From IMG/VR virus record IMGVR_UViG_3300048924_000191, positions 179,379 through 243,378 of that record: a stretch of 64,000 nt of DNA. One strand, given 5' to 3'. The position numbers and the translations under genes were made by a program. Of the stretch, positions 537-60,292 are shown in pieces (the stretch's first letter is position 1; the number at the start of each line of letters is the position of its first letter). The notes under the pieces are model-generated. The model did no database searches. It was not told where the DNA came from and was given only the letters and a program-made list of their open reading frames with translations.

Positions 537-2588
537 TTAACGACGATCCCAGTCATCGCTGAAGAAGCGACCACCACGACCTTCGCGATCACGATCGCGG
601 TCACGACCACGACGACGGCTCACGCCGCCTTCGGAGATTGCCTGCGACGAGAACAGACGGTTACCCACCGAACGACGACCCGACAGGGTGTCGCCACCGG
701 CGATGTACGGGCTCATGCGGGACTTGTCCAGGGCGGACGCGAGAGCCGGCAGCAGGTTCTTCTGGAAGACCAGCTGTTCGGCAGTCTGTACGACATGGAT
801 GTCCGGCACGAACTTGCGCAGGATGTGGTAACGCTCGGACAGGTTGTAGTCGACGGTGTGGCGGCTGTCTTCGAAGGTGAACTGGTAGTCGCGAACGAGC
901 TCCAGATCTTTCGAACCAGCACGGGTCAGCACAGCCGGTACGTTCCACTCGCTCAGCGGACGCAGAGTCGAGGTGTCCGGGTCGGTCCAGGTACCGATCA
1001 GAACGCGAGTACCCGCGGATTCAACAGGCAGAGGCATGCTGCCGCCGTTCATTTCGCGGTATTCTTCGCGGAAGCGGTCGTCGGTCAAAACGTCCCAGGC
1101 ATCGTACAGCTTGGTGCACAGGGCGTCGACTTTCGACTTGCTTTCCTCGGTGGCGATCTTCTCGAAGATCGACAGGATTGCGGCGTTCTGGCCGGAACTG
1201 GCGGTGACCATACCGAACGACACGTCGCGCTTGAAGAACGCGTCGATGAAGTCGGCGAAGTCGTCGTCGTTCATGTTGCTGGTGACCAGGTCCATTGCGT
1301 CGCGACGCTGATCATCTTCCAGATCCGCCAGCAGGGCGATATCCTTCAGATCGAACACCGGCTTGACTTTGCCACCGACGGTCTTGCGAGGACGCGCCAT
1401 GTTGGTCCAGCGGTAGTCGTTCGACAGCAGAGCCACGGAGCCCAGCGCCAGACCTACCAGACCCAGGCTGTTCGGGTAACCGTCGACCGGGGCGATGGAG
1501 TTGATGTTGATAACGCCCTGCATGAAGGCGGTTTCGTCATCTTCGTCGCGGCGGCGGGTACGCTTACGGCTCAGGCGGTTGCGGTCACGATCGTTGTCGT
1601 CGTCCTGGATGAACATATCCAGAGAGCAACGGGCTTCGACCATCGGAGTACGCTCGTACAGATCGTCCTCGTCATCGTCGGTCCGTTCCGAGTAGTGCGA
1701 AGTTACCAACGCATCGGTACGGATCGGCAGGCCGGAGGTGTCGTGGCCGAACGGCTGGTTGTAATCGATGGTGGCTTCCAGACGGTCGCCGCTGTCGATC
1801 AGTTCCGGACGCAGAGCGAACTCGCTGATTGCGTCTGGATTGCTGGCGTCCAGGATTTCCTGACGGTAACCGCACAGGGCATCGATGGCATTGTCGAAGA
1901 TCTGAGCAACCACGCGGTTGTTTTCTTTCTCGGAGACTTCCGAGATCAGATCCGCCAGGATCACCTGCGAGTTGACCAGCACGACACGTTTGCAACCCAG
2001 GCCGGCCGCTTCTTCACGAATGCCTTTGGTGTAGGCGTCGTTCATGCGGTCTTCCGGCAGCACCAGCGCCTCGTAGTTGTCGCCACGAGATACCGCGTTG
2101 CGGGTGGTCTGGGAACCCGGCTGCTCGATGCAGAGGGTGTAGACCAGAGTTACGCCGCCCGGGATCAGTTTCGGCAGAGGCAGGCAGACCAGCAGGGACG
2201 GCAGAGCACGCGAGCCTTTACGGCCGGTATACGGCAGAACCTGGAAGCGCGACTGCTGGATGTCCGGGTGGATGTTTGGATTGTCGAAGGTCTTGGCAGC
2301 CTTGAAGGTATCCATCAGGATAGCCAGGGCAGCGTCAGAAACACCCGACATTTGCGGGCGGTTCATGGCACGACCGAGGGACGCCATGTTGAAGCCACGG
2401 CCTTCGTCTTCTTCTTCACCACGACGCCCGCGCTTACCGCCACGGTCGCTGCGGTCACGGTCGCGGCCACCACGATCTTCATCACGGTCGCGGTCACGGT
2501 TTTCGGTGCGGTTCTCGCGGCCTTGATCGCCGGTCGACTTGTCGCCGCCGGTTGGTTCGTCGTCGAGTACCAGATCGTCATTGCTCAT
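537..2588 (-). CDS. chmA: Chimallin, major phage nuclear shell protein
   Basis: 683 aa with RBS AGGAG. Segments QPFGHDTSGLPIRTDALVT..DDLYE and LIGTWTD..LRPLSEWN match recalled chimallin segments (QPLHDTVGNPIRADIVVT..NEFYE; LGNWFD..RDRRDLD). Synteny between the nvRNAP gene and DNA polymerase agrees. Confidence 0.9.
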   Translation of the reverse strand: MSNDDLVLDDEPTGGDKSTGDQGRENRTENRDRDRDEDRGGRDRDRSDRGGKRGRRGEEEDEGRGFNMASLGRAMNRPQMSGVSDAALAILMDTFKAAKTFDNPNIHPDIQQSRFQVLPYTGRKGSRALPSLLVCLPLPKLIPGGVTLVYTLCIEQPGSQTTRNAVSRGDNYEALVLPEDRMNDAYTKGIREEAAGLGCKRVVLVNSQVILADLISEVSEKENNRVVAQIFDNAIDALCGYRQEILDASNPDAISEFALRPELIDSGDRLEATIDYNQPFGHDTSGLPIRTDALVTSHYSERTDDDEDDLYERTPMVEARCSLDMFIQDDDNDRDRNRLSRKRTRRRDEDDETAFMQGVININSIAPVDGYPNSLGLVGLALGSVALLSNDYRWTNMARPRKTVGGKVKPVFDLKDIALLADLEDDQRRDAMDLVTSNMNDDDFADFIDAFFKRDVSFGMVTASSGQNAAILSIFEKIATEESKSKVDALCTKLYDAWDVLTDDRFREEYREMNGGSMPLPVESAGTRVLIGTWTDPDTSTLRPLSEWNVPAVLTRAGSKDLELVRDYQFTFEDSRHTVDYNLSERYHILRKFVPDIHVVQTAEQLVFQKNLLPALASALDKSRMSPYIAGGDTLSGRRSVGNRLFSSQAISEGGVSRRRGRDRDRDREGRGGRFFSDDWDRR

Positions 2589-2730: not shown

Positions 2731-2781
2731 CGGTTCAAACCTTATATTGCCAAAGTAAAGTCTTACATCGAATCTCCCCTT

Positions 2782-2822
2782 CTGAATCAGTACAGTAATG
2801 TACTAACGTGATATTTTTAATC
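2782..2822 (-). promoter_or_regulatory. Early-type promoter motif copy (proximal, upstream of chmA)
   Basis: GATTAA-N13-GTACATTA-N7-GATTCAG. It contains TACATTAC, 7/8 identical to the phiKZ early consensus TATATTAC. Confidence 0.6.
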
Positions 2823-2838
2823 ACAATCATCGTCACGT

Positions 2839-2879
2839 TTGTATCACGATGATAATGTATCACCCACGAATCTTTAAAC
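2839..2879 (-). promoter_or_regulatory. Early-type promoter motif copy (distal, upstream of chmA)
   Basis: GTTTAA-N13-ATACATTA-N7-GATACAA. It shares an identical 19-mer (atcacgatgataatgtatc) with the copy at 36356-36396. Confidence 0.6.
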
Positions 2880-12093: not shown

Positions 12094-13101
12094 TTAGAAC
12101 AGACCGGTCTCGTCATCGGCTTTACCGGAACCGCCCAGGAGGGAGACAACCGGAGCCTTGACTTGCTGTTGCTGTTCGAGATCCGTACGTTGCTTGATCA
12201 GGTCCTTGAACAGCGAAGCTGCCGAAGCAGTAGATACCGCGAAGTAGAACGAGTTCGCGTAGACATCGCCTTCGTTGTTGCGCATGTAGCCGGCGGTGTC
12301 GTAGACGGAGTTCAGCTTCGGAATGGTTTCGTTACGATCACGCGCCACGGCTGCGTAAGCAGCGATCGGCATTTCCAGATCTTTGAACTTGTTGACATCT
12401 GCGGCGATGTGCAGCAGAGCCACGCCAGGACCGAAGTGGGTGACGGTGTGGTAGTCGAACACGTTGTTGACGTCGGCAGTGTCCATCGATTCGTTCATGC
12501 CGCTGAACAGGATCGACATCGCAGCCAGGTCGAAGGTAGGACCGACGTTGTTGGCATCGCGGGACTTGCTTTCGTCGTTCTTGTGCAGTGCGATCACGAT
12601 CGGACGGCCGGTGGTGCGGGTGGTGTCTTCCATACCGGTCAGGGTGCGGATGAAGTTGTCGACACGCTTGTAGCTCTCGTTGGAGCTGACGGCCAGGATG
12701 GCGCAGTGGTGGCCTTTCTGGTGCAGGTACTTGACCATGATTTGCGCGATGGCAGGACCAGTACCGCCGGTCAGGCTGGTGACGATGATGTTCTTGTCAC
12801 CCGGCTGGAACTTGGACGTGATGTCCGGCATTGCAGCCAGTACCGCAGCACCCACCGCTTTACGGTCACCGCCAGCACCATCCATCACGGTACCGTCTGG
12901 ACGCTTGACGTGGTAGACCTTGTCAGCCGAAACGCCGACCAGGTTGGACAGCGAGGTATCGACGAAAGCGTATTGCTCATCACCCAGCAAGTGGGTGTGC
13001 TTCGGCGAATTGTCCTGATAGGCGCGCAGGATGTTGGCGCCAGTACCACCAGCGGCGTAGATGCGTACGGTGCGACGTTGTGCGGTAATCAATTCAGACA
13101 T
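12094..13101 (-). CDS. phuZ: PhuZ phage tubulin
   Basis: 335 aa with GGTGANI, GAGGDR and the tubulin signature GGTGP, plus an acidic C-tail ADDETGLF. Confidence 0.95.
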   Translation of the reverse strand: MSELITAQRRTVRIYAAGGTGANILRAYQDNSPKHTHLLGDEQYAFVDTSLSNLVGVSADKVYHVKRPDGTVMDGAGGDRKAVGAAVLAAMPDITSKFQPGDKNIIVTSLTGGTGPAIAQIMVKYLHQKGHHCAILAVSSNESYKRVDNFIRTLTGMEDTTRTTGRPIVIALHKNDESKSRDANNVGPTFDLAAMSILFSGMNESMDTADVNNVFDYHTVTHFGPGVALLHIAADVNKFKDLEMPIAAYAAVARDRNETIPKLNSVYDTAGYMRNNEGDVYANSFYFAVSTASAASLFKDLIKQRTDLEQQQQVKAPVVSLLGGSGKADDETGLF

Positions 13102-13180: not shown

Positions 13181-14020
13181 ATGGACCCGATCTCTGTCGC
13201 GATGGTCCGCATCATGAATGGCGGTATCCCTCGTGACATTCTGAAACAGGTGTTTACTGCAAGACGCTATGACCCGACGGCTGACGATCGTTACTTCGAC
13301 AACTCGTTAGGTACATCGATTGAGGAACAGATCCGCCTCAAAGTCATTGAAGGTCGCGTGGCGATCGACATGAGCGTTATCGGTGGTACCGAAGTCACTC
13401 TGCCCATGCGGATGGCTCAACGTGAATACGTCGATGCATGGAACGTGATCTACCGATTCGACCGCAGGTTCACGGGCGGGCGGCGGATCATCTCGGTTTC
13501 GGAGATGACGTACGGCATGACTCAAGCGCTAGGCACCGGGGGTTCTCCTGGTTACGACAGCCGTGCGAGTCAATTCATGCTCAACTCTCGTAACCTTCTA
13601 CGAGCAACGACCGGTGTCGGTACGCTTTCGACGTCCTACGTCCAGCTCATCGGTCCCAACGCTGTACTGGTCAACGATGTCAACCAAGTGATCGGCGATT
13701 CCCTGTTGCGGTGTCGTCTGGCGCACGAAGCGAACTTCAACGACATCCAGCCTGCTTACTGGCATGACTTTGGCGAACTGATTGTCAGAGCGCTCAAGTC
13801 TTACATCTGGGCACAGCTGGTGATCGACATCGACGAGAACCAGATCCGCGGTGGTGCAACCATTGGCCGCATCCGTGAGATCGTTGACGGTTACGCTGAT
13901 GCTGAACAGATGTACATGGAGTTTCTCCAGAACGACTGGGCGAAGCTTCGTATCCTTTCTGACCCTCAGCAGATGCGGAAGATCAGCAAGTGGATTCTCG
14001 GCGGCAGGCCTCATCGGTAA
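13181..14020 (+). CDS. Conserved virion structural protein (phiKZ gp32-like, tentative)
   Basis: Start MDPISVAM with GGAGG and a TATG late-type motif upstream. Family call is from recall. Confidence 0.6.
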   Translation: MDPISVAMVRIMNGGIPRDILKQVFTARRYDPTADDRYFDNSLGTSIEEQIRLKVIEGRVAIDMSVIGGTEVTLPMRMAQREYVDAWNVIYRFDRRFTGGRRIISVSEMTYGMTQALGTGGSPGYDSRASQFMLNSRNLLRATTGVGTLSTSYVQLIGPNAVLVNDVNQVIGDSLLRCRLAHEANFNDIQPAYWHDFGELIVRALKSYIWAQLVIDIDENQIRGGATIGRIREIVDGYADAEQMYMEFLQNDWAKLRILSDPQQMRKISKWILGGRPHR

Positions 14021-14094
14021 CGTCATGGTGGTAATGTATCACCAGAAATCCGTAGAGTATCGGAGAGGGGTTTCGCCCCTCTCCGTCTATGCCG

Positions 14095-18428: not shown

Positions 18429-18469
18429 GTGATTCGTGTTGGGAATGTACGATCTAATTCTTTTTGGAT
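18429..18469 (-). promoter_or_regulatory. Degenerate early-type promoter motif
   Basis: ATCCAA-N13-GTACATTC-N7-GAATCAC. Confidence 0.45.
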
Positions 18470-33985: not shown

Positions 33986-34061
33986 TGGCTCCACGACCTG
34001 GACTCGAACCAGGGACCTGCGAGTTAACAGCCCGTTGCTCTACCGACTGAGCTATCGTGGA
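33986..34061 (-). tRNA. trnN: tRNA-Asn(GTT)
   Basis: 76-nt cloverleaf TCCACGA...CTGTTAA...GGTTCGAGTCC...TCGTGGAG-CCA with encoded CCA. Confidence 0.95.
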
Positions 34062-34068
34062 ATGAAAG

Positions 34069-34145
34069 TGGCGCCGCGTAGGGGACTTGAACCCCTGACC
34101 CCTAGCGTGACAGGCTAGTGCTCTAACCAGCTGAGCTAACGCAGC
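34069..34145 (-). tRNA. trnD: tRNA-Asp(GTC)
   Basis: 77-nt cloverleaf GCTGCGT...CTAGC-CTGTCAC-GCTAG...GGTTCAAGTCC...ACGCGGCG-CCA. Confidence 0.95.
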
Positions 34146-35208: not shown

Positions 35209-35637
35209 TTAATGATCGAAGTAAACCAGAACGCGAATGTCTGGACGAGTCTTCAATTCGAAAAATTCTTCCAGGAAGTCATCGACATCGCCCGCATCGC
35301 TGTTATCGCGGAAGAGGACTTCAGACAGATAGTCACGCCAATCCCACCCGCTTCCCGTAGGTTGACCGTCCAACAACATCGGCTGGTCGAAGTTGAACGT
35401 CAGCAGATCTTCGAGCATGAACCAGCAATGCCCGTAATCGCTATCAAGGTACTCGCGGTACGTGGTGCCGTCCGGTATCCCAGCAGTGCCGATGAAACGA
35501 TCGTGCTGGTGACCGAACTCCTTACCCAAGAACATAGCGGCGAATTCATCGGACGGCTTGTGGCTGACCTCATCGATCTTCTTCCACTTACCGTCTGTCT
35601 GCACTTCCAAGTAATAGTAGATTGCTTGACCCATCAT
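35209..35637 (-). CDS. Hypothetical acidic protein
   Basis: 142 aa, AAGGAG upstream. Confidence 0.7.
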   Translation of the reverse strand: MMGQAIYYYLEVQTDGKWKKIDEVSHKPSDEFAAMFLGKEFGHQHDRFIGTAGIPDGTTYREYLDSDYGHCWFMLEDLLTFNFDQPMLLDGQPTGSGWDWRDYLSEVLFRDNSDAGDVDDFLEEFFELKTRPDIRVLVYFDH

Positions 35638-35758
35638 AAACTCCTTCGTTACAAAAAATAAAAAGAGAGGGCATACAGCCGGGACCGAAGTCCCGGCTGT
35701 ATGTGTCGCGCGTCGCTAGGACGTTGGCCGTTCCAGGCGGCGCGCCAACCAGGCCGAA

Positions 35759-36229
35759 TCAGTTGGCGAAGGTGCTGGCTGCGCTTTCGCCCAGATAGCT
35801 GACGACCTTCTTCAGGTCGGTCTTCTTGCGGCCGCTGCCCAGGATGACGTCGGTGGTGGAGACGCCGAACTTCTGCCACGGTTTGCCCATGGCGGTGCCG
35901 GAACGCTCGCGCTCGTAGCTGTTTTCGATGGTGCTGTAGCCCAGCTTGACTTTCAGCGAACCGGACTTCAGTTCCGGGTTGGCTTTCATGTGGTCTTGCT
36001 GCAGCTCGCCGTGGGCCAGGGCCAGACCGGCGGTGATGTCCAGGGTGAAGTCTTGGCTGTCTTTCAGGCCGTCCATGGTCAGGGTCGGCGGCAGGAAGCG
36101 GGCGAAGACGTCATCGAGTTGCTTCTCGTCCTTGGGCACGGTCACGTTGGTGGTTGCATCCAGTACCAGCTCCGGCTTGACAGCGTCGGCGATTTCGCGG
36201 ATACGTGGGTTCAGTTCTTCACGGGACAT
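35759..36229 (-). CDS. Probably highly expressed early protein
   Basis: 156 aa with extreme GC3 codon bias, its own promoter motif, a structured leader and a terminator. Confidence 0.8.
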   Translation of the reverse strand: MSREELNPRIREIADAVKPELVLDATTNVTVPKDEKQLDDVFARFLPPTLTMDGLKDSQDFTLDITAGLALAHGELQQDHMKANPELKSGSLKVKLGYSTIENSYERERSGTAMGKPWQKFGVSTTDVILGSGRKKTDLKKVVSYLGESAASTFAN

Positions 36230-36355
36230 GGGGCATTTCCTTGATGGTAGTGTTGCTGATGGATCGAGAGGACTCTCGAGGGTTTCGTTCGTTCACATGA
36301 CAGTGAGTGTTTGTAACTACTTACAAGCAACCCATGAAGGATTGCGAGAAGATGC

Positions 36356-36396
36356 TGGAATCACGATGATAATGTATCGCTGTGTTTTGGTTAACT
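36356..36396 (-). promoter_or_regulatory. Early-type promoter motif
   Basis: AGTTAA-N13-ATACATTA-N7-GATTCCA. Confidence 0.65.
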
Positions 36397-36452
36397 TCGC
36401 AAAAAAAAAAGAATGGTAGAGCAGCACCCGAAAGGGTGCTGCTCTCATACCG

Positions 36453-36653
36453 TCACTCTTTCGGAGTGAACGCTTTCTTCATCAGCTTGTAGCCGCCGAA
36501 GACGGCCAGGCCCGCGACAGCAGCGCCGACGACGACAGCGCCGACTGGGTGAGCGGAGGCGAGGTCTTTGGCACGGGTAACCAGAGTGGCGCCGCGGATA
36601 GCTTCAGCAGTAACAGCAACAACAGCAGCAGCGCCTTGGATTTCAGCAGCCAT
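36453..36653 (-). CDS. 66-aa Ala/Val-rich membrane microprotein
   Basis: C-terminal helix VGAVVVGAAVAGLAVFGGYKLMKK; AAGGAG; flanked by a promoter motif and a U-tract terminator. Confidence 0.75.
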   Translation of the reverse strand: MAAEIQGAAAVVAVTAEAIRGATLVTRAKDLASAHPVGAVVVGAAVAGLAVFGGYKLMKKAFTPKE

Positions 36654-36704
36654 GGTAAATCTCCTTGTGTCTTAAATAGGTAGGGTATTGCTAAGAGGTT
36701 GGTA

Positions 36705-36745
36705 TTGATTCGGAACAGCTATGTATTACTGAAAATCTTTTAACT
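36705..36745 (-). promoter_or_regulatory. Early-type promoter motif
   Basis: AGTTAA-N13-ATACATAG-N7-GAATCAA. Confidence 0.75.
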
Positions 36746-36749
36746 GCGA

Positions 36750-37742
36750 TTACTTCATGAGGCGTGCGTTTGCGATCGTGTTGTTTACCAGATCGTTGAC
36801 GTACGCAGGATCAGCTGTGCGCAGTTGGACCATCAGATTGGTGATCTGAACTGGTGTCATGTGTACAGCTGTGATGCGCAGCGCCAGACGTGCACGACGG
36901 TAGCGATCGCCAGTTTCCGGAAGCATGCCGGCCAGTTCTTCCACTCGTTCTTGCAGAGTGTTGTCAGGCGTACCGGTCAGATAGGCTTCGACCCGCGCCA
37001 TGATAGCGGTGAGATCTACCTTGTCCGGATCTTCGATCTTGGCCCTTGCATGGACTTGGGTCATCTCCATGCGTGCACGCGCCTCTACTGGGAGTTCGGT
37101 AGAGAACGGAAGCCGTGCTGGACCACCATGATCCAGGTTAGGGAAGCTCCCGTAGTTCAGCAACGTGAACGACTCGTCGAACCCTTCGCCACGAGGCTCG
37201 TCTTCTATCGTTCCCGGCGCTGGCGCAAGGATGTCCTTGACCCCGTTAAGGTGATCACCCTCGAAGTCTTCCGGAACACTGTCGCCGATGACGATTTCGC
37301 GATTCACCAACCAACCCACTTTGGCGTGGATGGGGAGCATGTTGGCGATATTGCAAATGCGCGAGACAACCTCGGAGATACCCACGCCGTAACCGTCTTT
37401 ACCGCCCATCGCTTGATGGATGGATTCGAAGGTCACCGCACCCGTGGGGTACAGACCCGACAGTGGAGCCGGTACGTTTTGAACAACCACCTCGTTCTCG
37501 CCGCCGGTGAAGCGGTCGAAGAAGATCACGTTACCGACAGGGGTAACGATCCCCACGACACGACGGTTGTTCTCAGGGCCGGTGTTGAAGCGGAAGCGAG
37601 TGCCCATAGGCAGACCCAGAGCCATCGACATCATGGGTTCGAAGTAACCGGTGCTACCACGAAACTCTTCCTTGTATTCGATGTCCACGATCTTGCGAGT
37701 GTTTTCTTCGAACAGGGAGGTGAGGAATTCTGCTGCGTTCAT
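36750..37742 (-). CDS. Hypothetical protein
   Basis: 330 aa, AGGAG upstream. Confidence 0.75.
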   Translation of the reverse strand: MNAAEFLTSLFEENTRKIVDIEYKEEFRGSTGYFEPMMSMALGLPMGTRFRFNTGPENNRRVVGIVTPVGNVIFFDRFTGGENEVVVQNVPAPLSGLYPTGAVTFESIHQAMGGKDGYGVGISEVVSRICNIANMLPIHAKVGWLVNREIVIGDSVPEDFEGDHLNGVKDILAPAPGTIEDEPRGEGFDESFTLLNYGSFPNLDHGGPARLPFSTELPVEARARMEMTQVHARAKIEDPDKVDLTAIMARVEAYLTGTPDNTLQERVEELAGMLPETGDRYRRARLALRITAVHMTPVQITNLMVQLRTADPAYVNDLVNNTIANARLMK

Positions 37743-37805
37743 TGTGTTGTCTCCTAAGACGGTGTAAGGACCCTACACCCGTAAGGTCCCGTTGATTGAA
37801 TGAAA

Positions 37806-38210
37806 TTAAACGGCAGGGCTCAGGCTGAGCTTGAAGTTGGTGTTTGTGTTCACCACTTTCGCGATCAGACTGGTAGAGAACGCGATACCAGCGGCGTGTT
37901 GCTCAACGCCGTTGTTCAGGCCGGCCATGACTTCCTGGAAGAAGTCGTCAGCGATCGGCTCGATCACGCCATCGACTTGCAGGCCGGTGATCGACCATGG
38001 ATCGACGTTGGCTACCGAGTTCTCGATGATGTCGATTTCCTCGGCGGTGAGTTCTTCAACGGGACGAGCGTGCAGTTCTTGCAGCTTGTCGTTGATGGCG
38101 TTGAACTGCACCAGCGCTTCAGGAGAGAAGCGGGCAGAGGGTTCGCCTTCGGTAGCCACGATGCGAGCAATGATGGTGGCTTCCAGAGTTTGTGTGTTCA
38201 GTGCTTTCAT
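37806..38210 (-). CDS. Hypothetical acidic protein
   Basis: 134 aa, AGGAGG upstream. Confidence 0.75.
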   Translation of the reverse strand: MKALNTQTLEATIIARIVATEGEPSARFSPEALVQFNAINDKLQELHARPVEELTAEEIDIIENSVANVDPWSITGLQVDGVIEPIADDFFQEVMAGLNNGVEQHAAGIAFSTSLIAKVVNTNTNFKLSLSPAV

Positions 38211-38261
38211 TTCAGTGTCCTCCTAGGACGGTGTATGACTCATTAGTGAGTCAGCATTGGT

Positions 38262-38302
38262 TTGATTCATGACAACTATGTATCATTGAAACTATTTTAA
38301 CT
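38262..38302 (-). promoter_or_regulatory. Early-type promoter motif
   Basis: AGTTAA-N13-ATACATAG-N7-GAATCAA. Confidence 0.75.
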
Positions 38303-38447
38303 TCGATATTTCTTCCTTCAATTGGACCTTCATCTTCTGGCCCAATTCGCTCTTATCTGTCCAGACTTTGACAGTAAGATACGCGCTCCCAAGAAGGCTG
38401 GTAATACCAACCACGTTGACAACTACCTTAAAGACTGAGAGGTTCAT
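38292..38447 (-). CDS. 51-aa single-pass membrane microprotein
   Basis: MNLSVFKVVVNVVGITSLLGSAYLTVKVWTDKSELGQKMKVQLKEEISKLK; ATGA-coupled; not in the ORF track. Confidence 0.65.
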   Translation of the reverse strand: MNLSVFKVVVNVVGITSLLGSAYLTVKVWTDKSELGQKMKVQLKEEISKLK

Positions 38448-38587
38448 TCTCCACGTTCCTTCTTGCCGTCGGCACGACCCTTATACGCCATTGCGATAAT
38501 GACACCGCCAGCGGCAGCGCCGATGATAGCGGACTGCACAGCCACGCGTGCGATCAGAAAGAGAGCATAACCGTTCGGTATATTCAT
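38444..38587 (-). CDS. 47-aa single-pass membrane microprotein
   Basis: MNIPNGYALFLIARVAVQSAIIGAAAGGVIIAMAYKGRADGKKERGE; AGGAG; not in the ORF track. Confidence 0.7.
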   Translation of the reverse strand: MNIPNGYALFLIARVAVQSAIIGAAAGGVIIAMAYKGRADGKKERGE

Positions 38588-38611
38588 GATGTTTCTCCTG
38601 ACAGGGTTGTA

Positions 38612-38652
38612 TTGATTCACGTTGGCTATGTGTCAGTGTAAAATCTTTAACT
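38612..38652 (-). promoter_or_regulatory. Early-type promoter motif
   Basis: AGTTAA-N13-ACACATAG-N7-GAATCAA. Confidence 0.75.
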
Positions 38653-38708
38653 TTAATTCAACGGCATAAAGACCACCTACGGCCGCAAAGCCGTAGGTGG
38701 TCAGGCCA

Positions 38709-40106
38709 TCACTCGATCTTGTCGACGACGTTCTTGATGAGGGACGCCATGAGGGTGGTGGTGTACACCGCCTGCTCATAGACAACACTCTCCAGACCGG
38801 CGATACGACCAGCTGCATCTTCCAGCGCCGAGCACACACCCTTCAGATCGGACTTCTCTTCCGAGGTCAGCGTTGCGGTATTGCCGCGAGCAGACTTCAG
38901 AGCCGATTCGAAGTCGTCCAGGTTCAGACGATCGGTGGTGAACTTCACGTAACCACGAACCATTTCAGCCGCTTTCACCAACTCTTCGTAGGTGGCAGCA
39001 GACTTCATCTTCGAGGCATTGACGTGCTGGTGATACTTGTCGACGCCTTTCTTGATCGCATCGACATCACTTGCCGTATGCAGGGCGTCGTTAACGCCAT
39101 GAGCGAACCGGTTACCGTTCTGCCCGATGGCGCCTTGGATGGCGGCATGACGTACGGAACCGACAAACAGCTTCCAGGTAGCGGTACCCACACCCTTGGC
39201 CAGACCCATCTTCGAGAAGCTGTGTTCGTTGGAGCGCGAGAAGACAGGAACTGCCAGGTGAGCCATCTTGCCAGGCTTGTCTTTGGCGTTGATGGTGAAG
39301 TTACCCAGCAGACCGCCCTTAGCAGTCGCAACGTTCGACAGTTCACCGAAGTGACGGCCATTCATTGCGTTAGCCACACCAGCCTTGACATTGGTACCCA
39401 GCAGGGACTTGGCCATCGATACGACTTCGGACAGACCCTTAAGCGCAGCGTCGTGAGCGTGAGTCAGAAGTTCGGTCTGGCGATGCAGAGCAGCGTCCAG
39501 GTCGTTGACTTCTTTACCTTCCACAGTCAGGAACCGACGGAAGCCGTCGTGCTTGAGGATCACACCGCCTTCACGTAGTTTGGCTGCGATCGGAGTCAGC
39601 ATGTGCATGGCTTCTTCGAGGGCCTTGTTAGCGCTCTCGAGTTTGGCCTTGTCACGACGCAGGAACTCCATGATGCGACCTTCCGCACTGAAGTCCAGAG
39701 TGAGCGCACGGCACTCACGAGCGATCTCAGCCGAACGACGCGCATCACGCGCCAGACCACGCATCCGACCTTCATCACTGCCTGCCGATTCGAACGACTC
39801 AGCAGTCGCCGGCAGCTTCCAGGCGCGTACCACGGTGTTGAACTCGCGGTGCAGGCTTTCGATCGCCACTTCAGCAGTCAGGGTGTCGTTGGCTTCGGCC
39901 AGTACTTCAGCACGATCGCCAATCTCATCCAGGTGGTCAGCCACTTCACCAGCGTCAGCCGCAGAAGAGATCTCAGCCGCCAGACTGTTTTCGGTCACGT
40001 CGTCCAGGCGATGAACGACGGCGTCGTCGACCGCACCGGTGTCCTCAGGCGTGATAGCGCCCGATTCGGCGGTGTAGCCTTTCAACAGCTCTTCGATGTC
40101 ATTCAT
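38709..40106 (-). CDS. Internal head (ejection) protein, paralog 2
   Basis: 465 aa with an acidic propeptide and repeated A/S-x-E sites (AIE, SFE, SAE) typical of prohead-protease substrates; in the protease operon. Confidence 0.7.
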   Translation of the reverse strand: MNDIEELLKGYTAESGAITPEDTGAVDDAVVHRLDDVTENSLAAEISSAADAGEVADHLDEIGDRAEVLAEANDTLTAEVAIESLHREFNTVVRAWKLPATAESFESAGSDEGRMRGLARDARRSAEIARECRALTLDFSAEGRIMEFLRRDKAKLESANKALEEAMHMLTPIAAKLREGGVILKHDGFRRFLTVEGKEVNDLDAALHRQTELLTHAHDAALKGLSEVVSMAKSLLGTNVKAGVANAMNGRHFGELSNVATAKGGLLGNFTINAKDKPGKMAHLAVPVFSRSNEHSFSKMGLAKGVGTATWKLFVGSVRHAAIQGAIGQNGNRFAHGVNDALHTASDVDAIKKGVDKYHQHVNASKMKSAATYEELVKAAEMVRGYVKFTTDRLNLDDFESALKSARGNTATLTSEEKSDLKGVCSALEDAAGRIAGLESVVYEQAVYTTTLMASLIKNVVDKIE

Positions 40107-44682: not shown

Positions 44683-47600
44683 TTAGCCAAAATACATCTG
44701 GAACGCTTCCTCACCCACGTACCGCATGAGGGTGTTGGTGGAGCCGCCCGAGAACGGTCCGAGGATGATACGGTCGATTGGCGATTTGGCACCGAAGATC
44801 ATGTCGATCGGTTCGTTGGTAGTCAGCGTACGGTTGTTGCCGAACAGCGTCTCACCCACGGTCGACTTCATCTGGTTCCCCACCACCAACTTATCCGCAG
44901 TACCCATCGGTACACCCACAGTCATGTGGACGATGATGACGGCTTGTTGGTTCTCCAGAGCATTCTTGCCGATCCGCACGCCGCGAGGTACTTGCCCGGA
45001 GGTATAGTCCTTGCCAAGACGACGTGCTTTACGACGACGCTCCTTCTCCGCCAAGGTCACGATCGCTTGCAGCGACTCCGACATGTCGTCGACATCACCA
45101 CAATAGAAGACCTCAACTTTCGATACCACACCAACAGCCCCAGCCTCTGGCGCCATGCCGGCCAGACGTCCCATGACCTCACGGTCTGCTTCGTCATACA
45201 GTCCGTCATCGGAGGAGACTGCACCCCTGATATCGCATAGAATTGTCTTAAGATCCACCGTATCGCCTACATTGACGAGGTTGTTAATCTCGTAATCAAA
45301 GTTGACGGTGATTGGTTTCTCTTTCGACACGTAGGTACGCATCCGTTGAGCAAAGGCGATCGACAGAGAGCAGGAGTCCTCTACCGTGTACACTGCCTCA
45401 CGAAGCGCAATCCTAGCCATGCACCCAGCCATGTAGTCAACACGACGTGGGTTGATTGGGTCAGGCTTGAAGAACCCACGGTTGTACGCCAATACATCGA
45501 ACTCATTGACTTTGTCGCCGAGTTTGAACGTAGTCGCCAGGGTGTTCGGATAGGACGAACCTTCCGCATTGGTGTGGATCAGACCCAACTCATGCCGTTC
45601 CACTCGACCGTCTTCGTACTTGACCGCGATGTGGTCAGCAGACAGCTCCGTGATCTCACCCTTACCGGTTGCAGTTACGGCGAACTCAGGACCTTCACGA
45701 CCTGCGATCGCACGCTCCATGCCGGTACGCGCAGCAGGGACTTCATAACCCTCGGCCATGATACCGTGACCGTGCTGTACGTTGATGAAGTTACGGCGTT
45801 TCGGATCGTCACCCTCTGCGTCGAATGCCAGTTGAGCCGACGTCGACATGATGCAGGAGTTACCGTCACGCTTAGCGTCGTACAGACGCACCGTACCACG
45901 GGTAGTGGTCAGGTTAGCGTTAGGTGACATGTAGGTAATGATCGCCACGTCACCGGAGTCGACAGTACCCTCGGACATGAAGCCCAAGTCTTCCATCGGG
46001 AACAGACGAGCAGAGGCCACCATCGCACGACGACTTCGCCCACCGCGGCCTGTGTACGTCACCACTTCCCGTTCCCGTAGAGCGTGGATTGGGTTGATGT
46101 TGTTCACTGGCGATGTGGTTGGGTCCATCACGAGGATGTTGGTTGGATCGTTCGGGTTGATCGTTACCGACCCCCGGCCGCCTGCTGCACGAGCATTGTA
46201 CTGACGCACAGCTTTCGCCAGCGTTTCGTAAATGATGCCCGGTACGCGTTCGTAACCACGGATACGCTCCAGCAGTTCCACCCGCTTGTTCTTGTCCTCC
46301 CGGCGGTTGCTGACCTGAGCGGTGGTCAACATCTCCACCGAACGAATCAACAGACCCGTAAAGGTCCGAGGCTCGCCCATCCACTTCAGCAGATCTTCCG
46401 TGATTGGATCGACAAACAACGTGTTGAGAGAATCCAGCTCGCGCAGATAACGACTACCGATACGCGAACGGTCCAATACAGCAGCGTACACGTCCTTATC
46501 GTTGAACATACCCGAGTTGTAGGACTTGATCGACTCGTGGAACAGATTGAAGCCACTGAAGATCATCGACACCATTGGGTTGTTGCGGTCGAACACCAGC
46601 GTCTCGTTCTTGAAACGTACGGCGAACTCATCCTGAGTCAGGTTAGCACGTTCGCTCATGAGCACGCGCCGTACCTTCGCCTTGGTGATCTTGAGCAACC
46701 CATCCAGCCCCAGCAGGTAACCCAAGGCAACCCCGATAGGGATGTTCTTGGAATAGACCTTGACCTCAGCCATCATGGTTGGTGTAACGCCAGCCTCGAT
46801 CGGAATCCCACACAGCTCGAAGATACTACCCTCGTCTTCCAGCTTCCCGCCAGTGATCGAATAGACCGCACCGATCTTGTCCATGATCAATGCGCCTTTC
46901 GGTCCGCGACCCACCAACACCCAACCATCTTTCTCAAACGCCAGTTCGCGTTCGCTGTAGTCGTTCTGAGCAATGCGACGACGGTGGTCGAACCAGAAGT
47001 TCAACTTACCCGCACTGAAGCTCAGAAGACGTTCAGAGATCTCGGTGTAGATCAACGGAACATCGGCCTTATAGTCAACCACGGTACTGAGCACCGCTTT
47101 GTGGACTACAGGGTCTTGCGTGTCCTGCGCTTTCATCACCAGACGCTCAACGAACCAACGGTTCATGTCAAACGTCTTACGCTCAGATCGCTCCACGAAG
47201 ACCTTCGAGTAGTAACTCGACAGCGCCACACGAGACGGCGAGATCTTGCGGATCGGCAAGTCGGTACGCTGCTTACGCATGCGGTACTCAGTGCCTTTGT
47301 ACAGGAACGTGCCATTCGGACGAAGGCGAGGGATTGCAAACCGAACTGTCGACGGTAGACCTACAGCCGGAACCAGTTTCACGATGTGGATCTCGTTGTC
47401 CGTCACCGCGTCTTGTTCGTATTCGACTGTATAGCCAGTCACTGCCACTGGAGACTTCTGGATCGCCATGACGCAACGCAGGATATCCTTACGCAACGTC
47501 TTCTCGATGTACTGCTTGTCGAACTCATCCACACGCGAATGGAGCATCGACCGATCAATGACGGTTTTGTCGTCAGTGATGGGCTTTGGCTCAATGATCA

Positions 47601-48999
47601 GGTCTTCTTCGGCGATCTTCATCGCCTCGACCAAAGACTCACCAGACCCGTACGGGTCTTTGATGTTCTTGTGAGCTTCTGCAAGGCGCTTCAGACGGTT
47701 GTGGTCAGCAGGGCTGAGGAAACCCTTGAGCTGCAACTCGTCGGCTTTGATAAGCATCGCTGAGCCGTCTGCTTCAAGCGCTACGTGCTTGGTCTGCAAC
47801 ACATCGATGTCGATGGTTTTGGTGTCGATGACGTTACCTTCTTCATCGAACACTTCTTCCGTCTGCGACGCAGTGCGCACGCGCTCCAGATCCTCGAGTT
47901 CCTTCTCGAGTGCCGAAATGGTTTCGATCTCGTCGATAACCACGTCGTCTTCGTCCACCGTCTCGTTGGCGTCCATCCCAAACTCGAGATCGTCCAACTT
48001 CTCGTCTGGGGTGTCGATGGTAACAACCTTCTCGTCGACCACCTCTTCCTTGGTAGGTGTTTCGAGTGGCGAAGTAGCCTGGTGCAGTTTGTACAACATG
48101 CGCAGGAACTTCAGCTGGAAGATCTTCGATTCCATGCCAGACAGCTTGACGATCGGAAGCTCTACCTGAGCATTCGGATCTTTCTTGAGCTGCTCCTGAA
48201 CGGCCTTGTATTCTTCGATCACCTCTTTAGGGGAGATGATGAAGTCGTCCAGCCATTTCAGGTTGACCGAGACCCAGCCATTCAACCGACGGAAGATCAG
48301 GTTGATTTTGCCGTATTGCTCAGGATCGATTTGACCGAACAGCGATTCCTTACGCAATGGACCTGCCCACTTGAACAGATCGGCCATGGTCAGCATCTCA
48401 GCGCTACCGAAGTGCTTGAGCGTATCGCTACTCTGACGAGCAGCCAGCTCTCGCAACTGCGTCAGCGTCGGCATGACGTCTGGCAGATCGATCTCGATGA
48501 ACTGTTGACGGCGTGAGGTCCTGGTCGTCTTGTTGACGTTCAGCACCACTTCCTTCATCACGTTGTACCACTGATAATAGCTGGAACGGAACGTAGGTGG
48601 GTACTTGACCAGATGCGACAACATTGCGTAGTTGAATACAGGCAACACGCGGTCATCCAGATCCAGGCGTTCCAAGTTCTTCAACGGACGGAACGCACGG
48701 TTCTTGCGACGGAACTCGGTGATCATGCCCTGAGCGTTGGTGTACTTACGCTGAGGACCACCGATTGGATCGTGATACTGGGTTTCGTGATAGATGTAGA
48801 TAACACCCGGGATACTGCGCAGCATGGGATCGCTGATTTGCGGACCCATGGTAACGCCATCCACCGGAGCGAAGTGCAGCAAAGCCCGCTTCGGCAGTTG
48901 GAGACGAGCGATCGGATAAACGACCGGGATGTCCAACTGAGAGTTCTTGAACAGACCAAAGCGGCGGTTGTACACAGAGTACTCGAGCATCTCCGCCAC
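44683..48999 (-). CDS. Virion RNA polymerase beta-like subunit (phiKZ gp178-like)
   Basis: 1438 aa with rpoB-like motifs LREREVVTYTGRGGR, GFMSEGTVDSG, RRNFINVQHGH, VEDS and ADKLVVGNQMK. Confidence 0.92.
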   Translation of the reverse strand: MAEMLEYSVYNRRFGLFKNSQLDIPVVYPIARLQLPKRALLHFAPVDGVTMGPQISDPMLRSIPGVIYIYHETQYHDPIGGPQRKYTNAQGMITEFRRKNRAFRPLKNLERLDLDDRVLPVFNYAMLSHLVKYPPTFRSSYYQWYNVMKEVVLNVNKTTRTSRRQQFIEIDLPDVMPTLTQLRELAARQSSDTLKHFGSAEMLTMADLFKWAGPLRKESLFGQIDPEQYGKINLIFRRLNGWVSVNLKWLDDFIISPKEVIEEYKAVQEQLKKDPNAQVELPIVKLSGMESKIFQLKFLRMLYKLHQATSPLETPTKEEVVDEKVVTIDTPDEKLDDLEFGMDANETVDEDDVVIDEIETISALEKELEDLERVRTASQTEEVFDEEGNVIDTKTIDIDVLQTKHVALEADGSAMLIKADELQLKGFLSPADHNRLKRLAEAHKNIKDPYGSGESLVEAMKIAEEDLIIEPKPITDDKTVIDRSMLHSRVDEFDKQYIEKTLRKDILRCVMAIQKSPVAVTGYTVEYEQDAVTDNEIHIVKLVPAVGLPSTVRFAIPRLRPNGTFLYKGTEYRMRKQRTDLPIRKISPSRVALSSYYSKVFVERSERKTFDMNRWFVERLVMKAQDTQDPVVHKAVLSTVVDYKADVPLIYTEISERLLSFSAGKLNFWFDHRRRIAQNDYSERELAFEKDGWVLVGRGPKGALIMDKIGAVYSITGGKLEDEGSIFELCGIPIEAGVTPTMMAEVKVYSKNIPIGVALGYLLGLDGLLKITKAKVRRVLMSERANLTQDEFAVRFKNETLVFDRNNPMVSMIFSGFNLFHESIKSYNSGMFNDKDVYAAVLDRSRIGSRYLRELDSLNTLFVDPITEDLLKWMGEPRTFTGLLIRSVEMLTTAQVSNRREDKNKRVELLERIRGYERVPGIIYETLAKAVRQYNARAAGGRGSVTINPNDPTNILVMDPTTSPVNNINPIHALREREVVTYTGRGGRSRRAMVASARLFPMEDLGFMSEGTVDSGDVAIITYMSPNANLTTTRGTVRLYDAKRDGNSCIMSTSAQLAFDAEGDDPKRRNFINVQHGHGIMAEGYEVPAARTGMERAIAGREGPEFAVTATGKGEITELSADHIAVKYEDGRVERHELGLIHTNAEGSSYPNTLATTFKLGDKVNEFDVLAYNRGFFKPDPINPRRVDYMAGCMARIALREAVYTVEDSCSLSIAFAQRMRTYVSKEKPITVNFDYEINNLVNVGDTVDLKTILCDIRGAVSSDDGLYDEADREVMGRLAGMAPEAGAVGVVSKVEVFYCGDVDDMSESLQAIVTLAEKERRRKARRLGKDYTSGQVPRGVRIGKNALENQQAVIIVHMTVGVPMGTADKLVVGNQMKSTVGETLFGNNRTLTTNEPIDMIFGAKSPIDRIILGPFSGGSTNTLMRYVGEEAFQMYFG

Positions 49000-49001
49000 A
49001 G

Positions 49002-50678
49002 TTAAACTCCTTTCATGTGCTTGAGTTCGACTTCAGTTGGCTGACGTACGTGGTCGAAGCGACCCGTGAGGTTACGGATGACCAGGTCAGTCGTGTCATA
49101 AGACACGCTGGCACGAGGACGTCCAGACGGCATGACCCAGGCTTCTCGCGTACCGAGATAATGTTCAGTTTCAGCCAACGCTTCATCCGACATCGCCGAA
49201 GTAGCAGAACCGGTATCACCGTCGAAGTCAGCGCCGAGGCCAGACAGACGACTTGGGTGAGGAGACTCGGAGTCATGGAACGACGACAACCCGTATTTGG
49301 GGTATTCGTTCGCAATGCCATCCGGACCTTCAATCGGCTCCCAGTTGTGGTCGAGCTCACGACGCATCTCACCGATCGTGGTAGATCGCACGTAGATCCG
49401 CGAAGGGTACGTGGAGTTTTCCGATTCGATCGGGTAACGGACAACGTCGGTGAAGTACTTCGCCCACTTGTTGTAACCACACAGATACAGCAACTCGATC
49501 AACGTCATCGGGTGAACGTGTTCACGGTTGAAACCGTTCGGGAGTTCGTCAATGCTGTCGAACACCTTAAAGGTACCCTCGCCCAGATAGACGAGTTTCA
49601 GGTAATGACCTGCGATTTCAACAGGACGCTGACGCGCTTCGATGTTGACGAGTGAGTTGATCAGACCCCGCATCCCGTCTTCGGTCACCCAGCTGTCCCG
49701 TTCGGTAGGGCTGAGAGACACCCACGTCTGTTTCAACGTGTCTTTATCGATCAGGGGTACATCGCCCTCACCTGCGTTCATCAACTGCTCAAGGAAGCCT
49801 GTACGCAGCCAGTGGATAACCAGCGGCGCCATACTCGTCGCAGTCTGGTGGACACCCAGCACCGTAGCGTCATAGCCGGGTACGTTCGGGGAGTCAAGGT
49901 GAGCACCAGAGGTGTTCATCGCCGTCAGTACGTTTCGCGTACCCTCGTGAACGCGGCTACTGGCCCAACGATCTCGCTGGAAACCATTCTTGCCACCGAT
50001 GATACCTTCGATGTAATCGAACAACGCATTGACCGCAGCCTGAAGTGCAGAACGGTTGTGATCGTAAGCCGGCGACTCCATGTCTCGACTCGGCGTGATC
50101 GATTTACTGATCGCCAAGATCCGGTAGTAGAAGTCGTTGATCTCGTGCTTGACCACACGTCCATCGTCACCCATTTCCAGGTCACGCATACCGGCAGGCA
50201 TAACCGGAATGTTGATGGTGGTCCAACGATGCCGCCACCGCTCCAGGAAGTCGACCGTATCGCTGCGAGACAGAGAATCGTTCTTGACGAGCTCGATCTC
50301 ATTCATGTGACGGAAGAAGAACGAATACCCACTCTCCGCATCTTCCTCGATGCTGACCACGAAGTCTTTGCGAATCGGGTCAAACTTCGCTGTCCTCGCA
50401 CCCGACAGGATGTCGCCGTACAACGACTTGACGTTGAGGAGTTCACGGTAGACCTTCGGGTGGATGATCCGTACACCCAACTGAATCTTGCCGTAGGTCT
50501 GATCGCGCTCCTTCGAACCGACCATCCCAAAGATCCGGGTCGAGAACAAACCGTCCGGGTGGAAGTTGCTGGTAGCGCCCTCCATGATGTCCAGACGGGT
50601 GATCGGGGCGATGTGCCTGAGATCAGCGTCTTCCGTATGGAGAATCCAAATAAGCGCCGGAAGTCCTTCAGGAATCAT
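49002..50678 (-). CDS. Virion RNA polymerase beta'-like catalytic subunit (phiKZ gp180-like)
   Basis: 558 aa; FHPDGLFSTRIFG and the catalytic GADFDGD. Confidence 0.95.
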   Translation of the reverse strand: MIPEGLPALIWILHTEDADLRHIAPITRLDIMEGATSNFHPDGLFSTRIFGMVGSKERDQTYGKIQLGVRIIHPKVYRELLNVKSLYGDILSGARTAKFDPIRKDFVVSIEEDAESGYSFFFRHMNEIELVKNDSLSRSDTVDFLERWRHRWTTINIPVMPAGMRDLEMGDDGRVVKHEINDFYYRILAISKSITPSRDMESPAYDHNRSALQAAVNALFDYIEGIIGGKNGFQRDRWASSRVHEGTRNVLTAMNTSGAHLDSPNVPGYDATVLGVHQTATSMAPLVIHWLRTGFLEQLMNAGEGDVPLIDKDTLKQTWVSLSPTERDSWVTEDGMRGLINSLVNIEARQRPVEIAGHYLKLVYLGEGTFKVFDSIDELPNGFNREHVHPMTLIELLYLCGYNKWAKYFTDVVRYPIESENSTYPSRIYVRSTTIGEMRRELDHNWEPIEGPDGIANEYPKYGLSSFHDSESPHPSRLSGLGADFDGDTGSATSAMSDEALAETEHYLGTREAWVMPSGRPRASVSYDTTDLVIRNLTGRFDHVRQPTEVELKHMKGV

Positions 50679-60033: not shown

Positions 60034-60098
60034 TGTAGTGACCTCCTAGGTCGATGTATTGACGGCATAAGCGGGGCGACTTGCGCCGCCCCGATAGA

Positions 60099-60251: not shown

Positions 60252-60292
60252 TTGATTCAATCCCACTATGTATCATCATAAATCGTTTAACT
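60252..60292 (-). promoter_or_regulatory. Early-type promoter motif
   Basis: AGTTAA-N13-ATACATAG-N7-GAATCAA. Confidence 0.75.

What the first reader, a model, noticed from the sequence alone, without database searches (positions are those of the whole stretch)
36356..38652. Tripartite fixed-spacing early promoter defines a regulon that includes chmA
SEEN: the minus-strand motif AGTTAA-N13-ATACATAG-N7-GAATCAA occurs with invariant spacing at 36705, 38262, 38612 (one mismatch) and 60252. Variants lie at 36356, 2839, 2782 and 18429, always 30-250 nt upstream of a start codon. KNOWN: phiKZ early genes are read by the injected virion RNAP from a short TATATTAC motif, and the 2782 copy contains TACATTAC. 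INFERENCE: this is an extended virion-RNAP promoter with extra upstream (AGTTAA) and downstream (GAATCAA) elements, which predicts the set of genes expressed before the nucleus is built.
Basis: partly seen in the sequence, partly recalled or inferred. Interest (0 to 1): 0.62.

Follow-up and report, generated by a model that had tools for sequence, protein, structure and literature searches.

The report
Early promoters of a nucleus-forming jumbo phage
The repeated three-part motif is real and is most likely this giant phage's version of the known phiKZ-type early promoter, read by the RNA polymerase the virion injects; it sits before the nuclear-shell, tubulin and second-polymerase genes, so it is a new example of a known signal, not a new kind.

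Summary
The exact motif occurs four times in the window against 0 expected, and a fifth time elsewhere in the 243-kb genome.

It is the best-conserved form of a family of about 26 sites. All lie on the minus strand, between genes and pointing the same way as the gene downstream.

Shared layout, counted from the T of the core:
- TTAA(A) at -18 to -14
- T-tract at -9 to -7
- T at -3
- core TACAT[T/A] at 0 to 5
- TGA at +13 to +15

phiKZ's early promoters (TATATTAC) have all of these blocks in the same register. So the "extra" upstream and downstream elements are not extra. The downstream G sits where phiKZ-type early transcripts are reported to start.

Sites head the units for chmA, PhuZ and the five non-virion RNA polymerase subunits (the gp55-like gene only by read-through). 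None lies in the virion-gene block.

The cultured relative pPa_SNUABM_DT01 also has 26 sites, all on one strand, and seven of them lie at orthologous operons.

The virion-polymerase reading is therefore supported by sequence. No RNA data exist to confirm it.

The chmA and polymerase promoters form a second subclass (core TACATTA[C/T], weak flanks). DT01 shows the same split.

The parts
38612..38652 (-). Class I promoter-like site (core CACATAG, one mismatch). Predicted start is the G at 38618. It heads two small membrane-type ORFs of 47 and 51 aa.
   Evidence: 41.0 bits. DT01 has a class I site at the same place, after its virion-gene block.
38661..38703 (-). Terminator-like hairpin with a TTTATGCC tail. 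It closes the virion-gene block just upstream of site 38632.
   Evidence: Read directly. This tail is enriched 16.6-fold in upstream regions.
38292..38587 (-). Two small ORFs (47 aa at 38444-38587, 51 aa at 38292-38447), each with one hydrophobic helix.
   Evidence: No PHROG match for the 47-aa ORF. DT01 has 46- and 45-aa ORFs at the same position.
38262..38302 (-). Class I site, exact motif. Predicted start is the G at 38268. It heads the 134-aa and 330-aa ORFs.
   Evidence: 45.6 bits. Its upstream element overlaps the end of the 51-aa ORF.
36750..38210 (-). Two orphan ORFs: 134 aa (37806-38210) and 330 aa (36750-37742).
   Evidence: No PHROG or Pfam match. No usable ESM Atlas match for the 330-aa protein.
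36705..36745 (-). Class I site, exact motif. Predicted start is the G at 36711. It heads a 66-aa ORF (36453-36653).
   Evidence: 39.4 bits.
36418..36445 (-). Terminator-like hairpin after the 66-aa ORF.
   Evidence: 12 pairs, 8 of them G-C.
36356..36396 (-). Class II site (core TACATTAT). Predicted start is the G at 36362. It heads a 156-aa ORF (35759-36229, phrog_9746).
   Evidence: (34.4 bits). DT01 has a class II site at the same position, after a terminator.
60252..60292 (-). Class I site, exact motif. Predicted start is the G at 60258. It heads a 41-aa ORF (60099-60224) that is followed by a hairpin with a TTATGCC tail.
   Evidence: (43.7 bits). The TAA stop of the upstream 338-aa gene lies inside the AGTTAA element.
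18429..18469 (-). Weaker site (core TACATTC). Predicted start is the G at 18435. It heads a 56-aa ORF.
   Evidence: 27.9 bits.
14018..14058 (-). Predicted start is the G at 14024. It points through the opposite-strand DUF7484 gene towards phuZ.
   Evidence: (30.4 bits). In DT01 the phuZ ortholog has a site 36 nt upstream of it.
12094..13101 (-). PhuZ-type phage tubulin, 335 aa.
   Evidence: Pfam TubZ_C_2 at 28.6 bits (cut-off 27) and Tubulin at 30.4 bits, just under its cut-off of 33.
2839..2879 (-). Class II site (core TACATTAT). This is the distal chmA promoter; predicted start is the G at 2845.
   Evidence: 36.5 bits.
2782..2822 (-). Class II site (core TACATTAC). This is the proximal chmA promoter; predicted start is the G at 2788.
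   Evidence: 36.1 bits.
537..2588 (-). chmA (nuclear shell protein), 683 aa. A terminator-like hairpin at about 490-515 follows it, then the gp55-like non-virion polymerase subunit.
   Evidence: phrog_4795, E 9.4e-25. Hairpin read. gp55 match to PDB 7OGP chain A, E 2.4e-65.
44683..50678 (-). Two virion RNA polymerase subunit genes (1438 aa and 558 aa), the proposed reader of the motif. No motif site lies in front of them.
   Evidence: phrog_3148 and phrog_2986. Same gene order as phiKZ gp178-gp181 and as DT01's annotated virion polymerase genes. No site between 38632 and 60272.

Best explanation
These are the early promoters of a DT01-like chimallivirus, most likely recognised by the multisubunit RNA polymerase that is packaged in the virion and injected with the DNA.

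Counted from the conserved G taken as +1, the layout is:
- TTAA(A) at about -32 to -28
- T-tract at -23 to -21
- T at -17
- eight-base core TACAT[T/A][A/G][C/T] at -14 to -7
- T-G-A at -1 to +2

Transcription would start at that G, so GAATCAA would be the first bases of the RNA.

About 26 such sites head units that contain chmA, PhuZ, the five non-virion polymerase subunits (the gp55-like gene only by read-through of the terminator-like hairpin after chmA) and many small orphan genes. These are the genes needed before the nucleus and the second polymerase exist.

Shown here: the motif family, its strand and position bias, its register match to phiKZ, its gene set, and its conservation in relatives.

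Inferred: the start point, the early timing, and which polymerase reads it.
For: 1. Statistics. The exact motif occurs 4 times against 0 expected. All 26 scan hits are on the minus strand and between genes, and none on the plus strand is genuine. TACATTA is the most enriched 7-mer upstream of genes, at 20.7-fold.

2. Register match to phiKZ.
- In 33 forward TATATTAC sites, A at -15 is 27/33, T at -8 is 28/33, T at +13 is 28/33 and G at +14 is 25/33.
- Frequency-matrix correlation with this genome's sites peaks at offset 0: r 0.635 overall and 0.579 for flanks alone, against 0.38 or less at every other offset.
- Published: phiKZ-family early elements lie near -10 and the start is 6 nt downstream of the element; AR9 is ...TATATTAT-N6-G (PMC7598289, PMC5312081). 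phiKZ has an extended -10 box plus a T-rich part upstream of -19 (PMC8244752).

3. Gene set.
- chmA and PhuZ.
- Orthologs of phiKZ gp68, gp71-73, gp74, gp123 and gp55, by matches to PDB 7OGP: E 3.8e-27, 7.6e-110, 2.4e-64, 1.1e-49 and 2.4e-65.
- In phiKZ these subunits are products of early genes (PMC4666361).

4. Virion polymerase genes are present, and no site precedes them.

5. Conservation.
- DT01 has 26 sites, all on one strand, including before chmA, gp71-73/gp74, the gp68 unit, the gp123 unit and phuZ.
- The IMG/VR relative G002 keeps the gp123-unit site.
- Near-identical strains differ at 0 of 301 motif positions, against 1.58% of other intergenic positions.
Against: There is no transcript evidence of any kind. 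The phage is known only from root and rhizosphere metagenomes, and no RNA run holds it.

The core also resembles an extended -10 element (TGnTAnAnT), so host polymerase use cannot be excluded from sequence alone. Some phiKZ relatives (RSL2, RSF1) need host polymerase despite encoding virion polymerase genes (PMC5468394).

A terminator-like hairpin stands between chmA and the gp55-like gene. That gene belongs to a motif-headed unit only if there is read-through.

The site that would serve phuZ lies 923 nt upstream, across an opposite-strand gene.
Confidence: 0.8

Rival explanations
1. The sites are early promoters read by the host sigma-70 polymerase, with TGnTACATT acting as an extended -10 element.
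For: T at -3 (23/26) and G or A at -2, followed by TACATT, gives TGnTAnAnT. The conserved G lies about where a sigma-70 start would fall. Rifampicin-sensitive phiKZ relatives exist (PMC5468394).
Against: A consensus sigma-70 scan calls none of the sites in its proper register. No -35 hexamer sits at 16-18 bp. The C at core position 3 never varies, and no TATAAT-like variants appear although the scan would tolerate one core mismatch. The flanks match phiKZ's rifampicin-independent early promoters base for base.
Confidence: 0.08
2. The exact tripartite copies (class I) are a separate promoter class, read at another time or with an added phage factor, and are not simply strong early promoters.
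For: Class I has a different core (TACATAG or TACATGA) and much stronger flanks than class II, in both G000 and DT01. Leave-one-out flank scores are 27.8 against 9.7 (p 3e-6) and 29.5 against 11.5 (p 3e-5). Class I heads only small, non-conserved genes: 0 of 19 first genes are conserved, against 8 of 33 for class II (Fisher p 0.02).
Against: Both classes share the same geometry, and TACAT and the TGA lie at identical spacing. The difference could be compensation for a weaker core. It could also reflect copying of promoter cassettes; DT01 class I copies are alike even at spacer positions (0.55 identity). phiKZ shows no such split.
Confidence: 0.1
3. The motif is an operator for a dimeric DNA-binding protein, or an N4-style hairpin promoter, because some copies have inverted repeats around the core.
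For: Some copies show GATGA-TACATNG-TCNTC or GATA-CAT-TATC symmetry.
Against: Across the 26 sites the five-pair stem has 2.15 complementary pairs per site, against 1.86 when arms are swapped between sites (p 0.04, uncorrected). Eight sites have 0 or 1 pair. The conserved blocks are not symmetric.
Confidence: 0.02

Closest known systems
phiKZ early promoters (TATATTAC class), attributed to the virion RNA polymerase
   Same: The eight-base core lies in the same place, and TACATTAC matches 7 of 8 bases. The upstream TT(c)AAA and T-tract, and T-G-A six bases after the core, are all in the same register. About 26-33 sites per genome, almost all on one strand. Present before chmA. One phiKZ site even has the core TACATTAT.
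   Different: Core position 3 is C here instead of T, in a 54% G+C genome. The upstream block reads AGTTAA here, against ATTCAAA or TTAAAAA in phiKZ. This genome and DT01 show two core subclasses that were not seen in phiKZ.
AR9 early promoters (AAATATATATTAT-N6-G)
   Same: A conserved element near -10 with the start at a G six bases downstream. Transcripts do not depend on new protein synthesis (PMC5312081).
   Different: AR9's element is longer and fully A+T. Its genome contains uracil. No sequence comparison was run here.
Pseudomonas phage pPa_SNUABM_DT01 (MW735835.1), the closest cultured relative
   Same: Same core GATACAT[T/G/A][A/G]T-N5-TGA. 26 sites, all on one strand, at orthologous operons. 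Same two subclasses.
   Different: Its upstream block is ATTCGAA or ATTGAAA rather than AGTTAA, and its class I core is mostly TACATGAT. Only 50% amino-acid identity in a virion polymerase subunit. The DT01 genome paper has no promoter analysis: the word 'promoter' occurs 0 times.
Bacterial sigma-70 extended -10 promoters
   Same: TGn before a TA-A-T-like hexamer, with a purine start about 7-8 nt downstream.
   Different: No -35 hexamer at 16-18 bp, an invariant C in the hexamer, and sites not called by a consensus scan.

Membership tests
phiKZ-type early (virion polymerase) promoter | Highly conserved element of about 8-10 nt related to TATATTAC, centred near -10 | tested here: met
   TACAT is invariant in 23 of 26 sites (CACAT in 3). 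TACATTAC matches phiKZ's core at 7 of 8 bases.
phiKZ-type early (virion polymerase) promoter | T/A-rich upstream element at fixed distance (upstream of -19) | tested here: met
   TTAA at -18 to -15 and the T-tract at -9 to -7 from the core T lie in the same columns as in phiKZ. Flank-only correlation is 0.579 at offset 0.
phiKZ-type early (virion polymerase) promoter | Transcription start 6 nt downstream of the element | tested here: inconclusive
   G at +14 is conserved in 24 of the first 26 aligned sites and in 25 of 33 phiKZ sites. No 5'-end data exist for this phage.
phiKZ-type early (virion polymerase) promoter | Located before early genes, including the non-virion polymerase subunits and chmA, and not before virion genes | tested here: met
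   The gp55-like gene is reached only by read-through of a hairpin.
phiKZ-type early (virion polymerase) promoter | The phage encodes a virion-packaged multisubunit RNA polymerase | tested here: met
   Genes are present (phrog_3148 and phrog_2986, with phiKZ-like gene order). Packaging in the virion was not testable.
phiKZ-type early (virion polymerase) promoter | Activity independent of host polymerase and of new protein synthesis | not testable with these tools
   Needs infection experiments with rifampicin and chloramphenicol.
Sigma-70 promoter | TTGACA and TATAAT hexamers 16-18 bp apart | tested here: not met
   The scan of 35600-38900 calls no site in register. Its only overlap is a shifted TTAACC-17-TATCAT at 36394-36366.
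N4-type hairpin promoter | Conserved inverted repeat forming a stem around a short loop | tested here: not met
   2.15 against 1.86 complementary pairs per site, p 0.04 uncorrected; many sites have none.

The most novel reading that the evidence does not exclude
The virion polymerase of this phage lineage may use a two-tier promoter code that has been kept since G000 and DT01 diverged.
- Class I: core TACATAG or TACATGA with near-invariant flanks. It drives small, fast-evolving orphan genes, possibly immediate host-takeover functions.
- Class II: core TACATTA[C/T] with loose flanks. It drives the conserved core set (chmA, PhuZ, all non-virion polymerase subunits).

Class is kept at the seven orthologous positions compared. 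If real, promoter sequence alone would sort early genes into two expression programmes.
Probability: 0.3. Interest if true: 0.55.

Novelty: new member of a known kind. Interest (0 to 1): 0.35.

Why it matters
The motif gives a sequence-only map of the likely first-wave genes of an uncultivated rhizosphere nucleus-forming phage. It shows that the phiKZ early-promoter design is kept, block for block, in a distant high-G+C lineage with a changed core.

It also flags about 20 small orphan genes with the strongest promoters as candidates for host takeover. DT01 is cultured, so the start site, the timing and the two-class idea can all be tested directly.

Tried and rejected
- Hairpin or operator reading: arm complementarity is barely above the swapped control. 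Rejected as a general feature.
- Duplication of gene plus promoter: the roughly 102-aa genes behind three strong copies are not paralogs at E 1e-5. Class I copies in G000 are near random identity outside the motif (0.28-0.31).
- Three plus-strand TACATAG/TACATTA sites that I first included (genome 7158, 125973, 182369) score under 12 bits and were dropped.
- Known RNA family: only two tRNAs were found in the window.
- RNA evidence: no RNA-seq holder was found. Read laying was not run, because contigs cannot show starts.
- Close matches in the phage collection: megablast of the region and tblastn of chmA found nothing.
- More relatives: the IMG/VR search with the 1438-aa polymerase subunit returned only a near-identical strain.
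- Experimental phiKZ start coordinates: the supplements of two papers were not held. A full-text search for TATATTAC was uninformative.
- The 330-aa orphan has no usable ESM Atlas match.
- The chmA leader is not unusually structured (z -0.82).
- My terminator finder under-calls. The figure of 95 genes inside motif-headed units is an upper estimate.
Full report
**Source.** The window is the last 64 kb of a single 243,378-bp contig with 54% G+C. The contig is classed as complete, with direct terminal repeats. Near-identical DNA occurs in root and rhizosphere metagenomes. No RNA run holds it.

It is a chimallivirus.
- Window 537-2588 (-) matches the nuclear shell family (phrog_4795, E 9.4e-25).
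- Window 44683-50678 (-) encodes two large polymerase subunits of the virion set. Next to them is a gp181-like 2248-aa lysin on the opposite strand, as in phiKZ.
- The closest cultured phage is Pseudomonas phage pPa_SNUABM_DT01, with 50% identity in the 558-aa subunit.

**Observation.** The exact motif occurs at the four stated places, with none in 100 shuffles. A fifth exact copy lies at genome 123016-123056.

**The family.** I aligned intergenic TACAT[T/A] sites. The fixed layout, counted from the T of the core, is:
- TTAA at -18 to -15
- T-tract at -9 to -7
- T at -3
- TACAT[T/A] at 0 to 5
- TGA at +13 to +15, with G at +14 in 24 of 26

A position-weight scan finds 26 sites of 12 bits or more on the minus strand. 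There is no genuine site on the plus strand. Maxima in random sequence were 11-17 bits. All sites lie between my gene calls and point at a gene. Only about 10% of the genome is intergenic, and 78% of genes are on the minus strand.

TACATTA is the most enriched 7-mer upstream of genes, at 20.7-fold. The other enriched words are ribosome-binding sites and terminator tails. In near-identical strains, 0 of 301 motif positions differ, against 1.58% of other intergenic positions.

**Comparison with phiKZ.** I took the phiKZ record and aligned its 33 forward TATATTAC sites. There are 9 on the reverse strand and 10-12 in the backwards-read controls. The columns agree with this genome's sites:
- A-rich TT(c)AAA at -18 to -14
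- TTT at -9 to -7
- T at +13 (28 of 33) and G at +14 (25 of 33)

The correlation of the two frequency matrices peaks at offset 0. It is 0.635 overall and 0.579 with the core removed, against 0.38 or less at every other offset. The phiKZ chmA promoter reads TATATTAC, six bases, then GAATC.

The literature fits this.
- Every polymerase-encoding jumbo phage has such an element near -10, with the start 6 nt downstream of it. AR9 has ...TATATTAT-N6-G (PMC7598289, PMC5312081).
- phiKZ's element is an extended -10 box with a T-rich part upstream of -19.
- PHIKZ054 (chmA) has an early promoter plus a middle promoter (PMC8244752).

The G of GAATCAA is the predicted start.

**Genes served.** Matches to the solved phiKZ non-virion polymerase (PDB 7OGP) place all five subunit orthologs behind sites:

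| phiKZ subunit | Position relative to the site | E-value |
|---|---|---|
| gp68-like | first gene after genome site 171817 | 3.8e-27 |
| gp71-73-like | first gene after site 166773 | 7.6e-110 |
| gp74-like | second gene after site 166773 | 2.4e-64 |
| gp123-like | second gene after site 39505 | 1.1e-49 |
| gp55-like | directly after chmA, beyond a terminator-like hairpin | 2.4e-65 |

In phiKZ these subunits are products of early genes, while the virion set is encoded by middle genes (PMC4666361). chmA has two tandem sites, with cores at window 2802 and 2859. PhuZ (window 12094-13101) is served only by the site at 14038. No site lies between 38632 and 60272, which is the virion-gene block that includes the virion polymerase genes.

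Predicted leaders are mostly 16-63 nt long.

**Relatives.** DT01 has 26 sites, all on its plus strand. A loosened pattern gave 12 forward, 1 reverse and 0 control matches. Seven DT01 sites stand at orthologous units:
- chmA plus the gp55-like gene
- gp71-73/gp74 plus helicase
- the gp68 unit
- the gp123 unit
- phuZ
- the small membrane ORFs after the virion block
- the unit after those ORFs

A partial IMG/VR relative (G002, about 67% nucleotide identity in conserved genes) has six sites, all on one strand. They include the gp123 unit. The DT01 genome paper contains no promoter analysis.

| | Class I | Class II |
|---|---|---|
| Core | TACATAG in G000; TACATGA or TACATAG in DT01 | TACATTA[C/T] |
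| Flank score, G000 | 27.8 | 9.7 (p 3e-6) |
| Flank score, DT01 | 29.5 | 11.5 (p 3e-5) |
| Genes headed | small orphan genes | chmA, PhuZ, all polymerase units |
| First genes conserved in the other phage | 0 of 19 | 8 of 33 |

Flank scores are leave-one-out values. The conservation counts use tblastn; Fisher p is 0.02, or 0.002 if chmA and the first gene of DT01's gp123-like unit are counted.

In G000, class I copies are near random identity outside the motif. They are therefore not recent segment copies. phiKZ shows no such split. The cause could be two functional tiers, compensation for a weaker core, or shared descent of promoter cassettes. I cannot decide between these.

**Rivals.**
- A consensus sigma-70 scan does not call the sites, and the core does not vary as sigma-70 hexamers do. 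Host polymerase still cannot be excluded without drug experiments, because some phiKZ relatives are rifampicin sensitive (PMC5468394).
- Inverted repeats around the core are not a general feature.
- No Rfam family matches.

**Verdict.** It is a new member of a known kind, the clade-specific form of the phiKZ-type early promoter. The "extra elements" claim is not supported. chmA belongs to the weaker-flank subclass, not to the exact tripartite set. Timing, start point and the identity of the polymerase remain untested.

Noticed in passing
window 13181-14058: The only motif site that could serve phuZ (12094-13101, -) has its core T at 14038, 923 nt upstream. A plus-strand DUF7484 gene (13181-14020) lies between them, so an early transcript would run antisense through that gene. 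In DT01 the site is 36 nt from phuZ.
   Followed up: partly
window 38661-38703, 60072-60095; genome-wide: Many terminator-like hairpins end in TTTATGC(C) instead of a T-run (7-mer enriched 16.6-fold; 13 of 53 intergenic hairpins have a TATG tail). This resembles phiKZ's hairpin-TTAT terminators. The tail contains TATG, which is the phiKZ late-promoter consensus.
   Followed up: partly
L021:8081-8131, L022:14966-15020, L025:2965-3022 (minus strand): Three predicted leaders behind sites with strongly conserved flanks share a GATCC-N4-GGATC hairpin followed by CACACCGACCTAGGAGG (or a close variant) just before the start codon. The downstream genes are not paralogs.
   Followed up: no
window 2589-2845: The chmA leader is long (200 and 257 nt from the two predicted starts). 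It begins with a ribosome-binding site followed by ATG-TAA (about 2763-2768), a start-stop mini-ORF. The fold is not unusual (z -0.82).
   Followed up: partly
window 33986-34145: tRNA-Asn and tRNA-Asp genes lie on the minus strand, downstream of the gene run that starts at site 36376, with a terminator-like hairpin (35672-35703) in between. The DT01 paper reports the same tRNA pair.
   Followed up: no
window 62537-62552: A weak core-plus-TGA match lies inside the 3' end of ORF 62416-62919, 201 nt before the 146-aa gene. The orthologous operon in G002 and in DT01 has a site upstream, so this may be a degenerate or embedded promoter.
   Followed up: partly
window 60287-60292, 38292-38302: The upstream AGTTAA block overlaps the end of the preceding gene. 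At 60287-60289 that gene's TAA stop lies inside AGTTAA. Promoters are packed against the coding sequence.
   Followed up: no
L021:8779 to L022:2292 (genome 48.8-62.3 kb, plus strand): Two tandem paralog arrays (13 and 4 members) lie on the plus strand. No early-type site precedes any plus-strand gene.
   Followed up: no
L022:7084-8409 and L027:8501-10081: The 441-aa and 526-aa proteins are paralogs, and both sit in motif-headed units. The 526-aa gene is next to the gp68-like polymerase subunit. Function unknown (phrog_3141).
   Followed up: no
whole genome: A bioRxiv paper (10.1101/2024.08.29.610337) describes JPTI55, a compost jumbo phage similar to DT01 that infects Pseudomonas fluorescens SBW25. 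It could be a cultured relative closer to this rhizosphere phage. I did not compare sequences.
   Followed up: no
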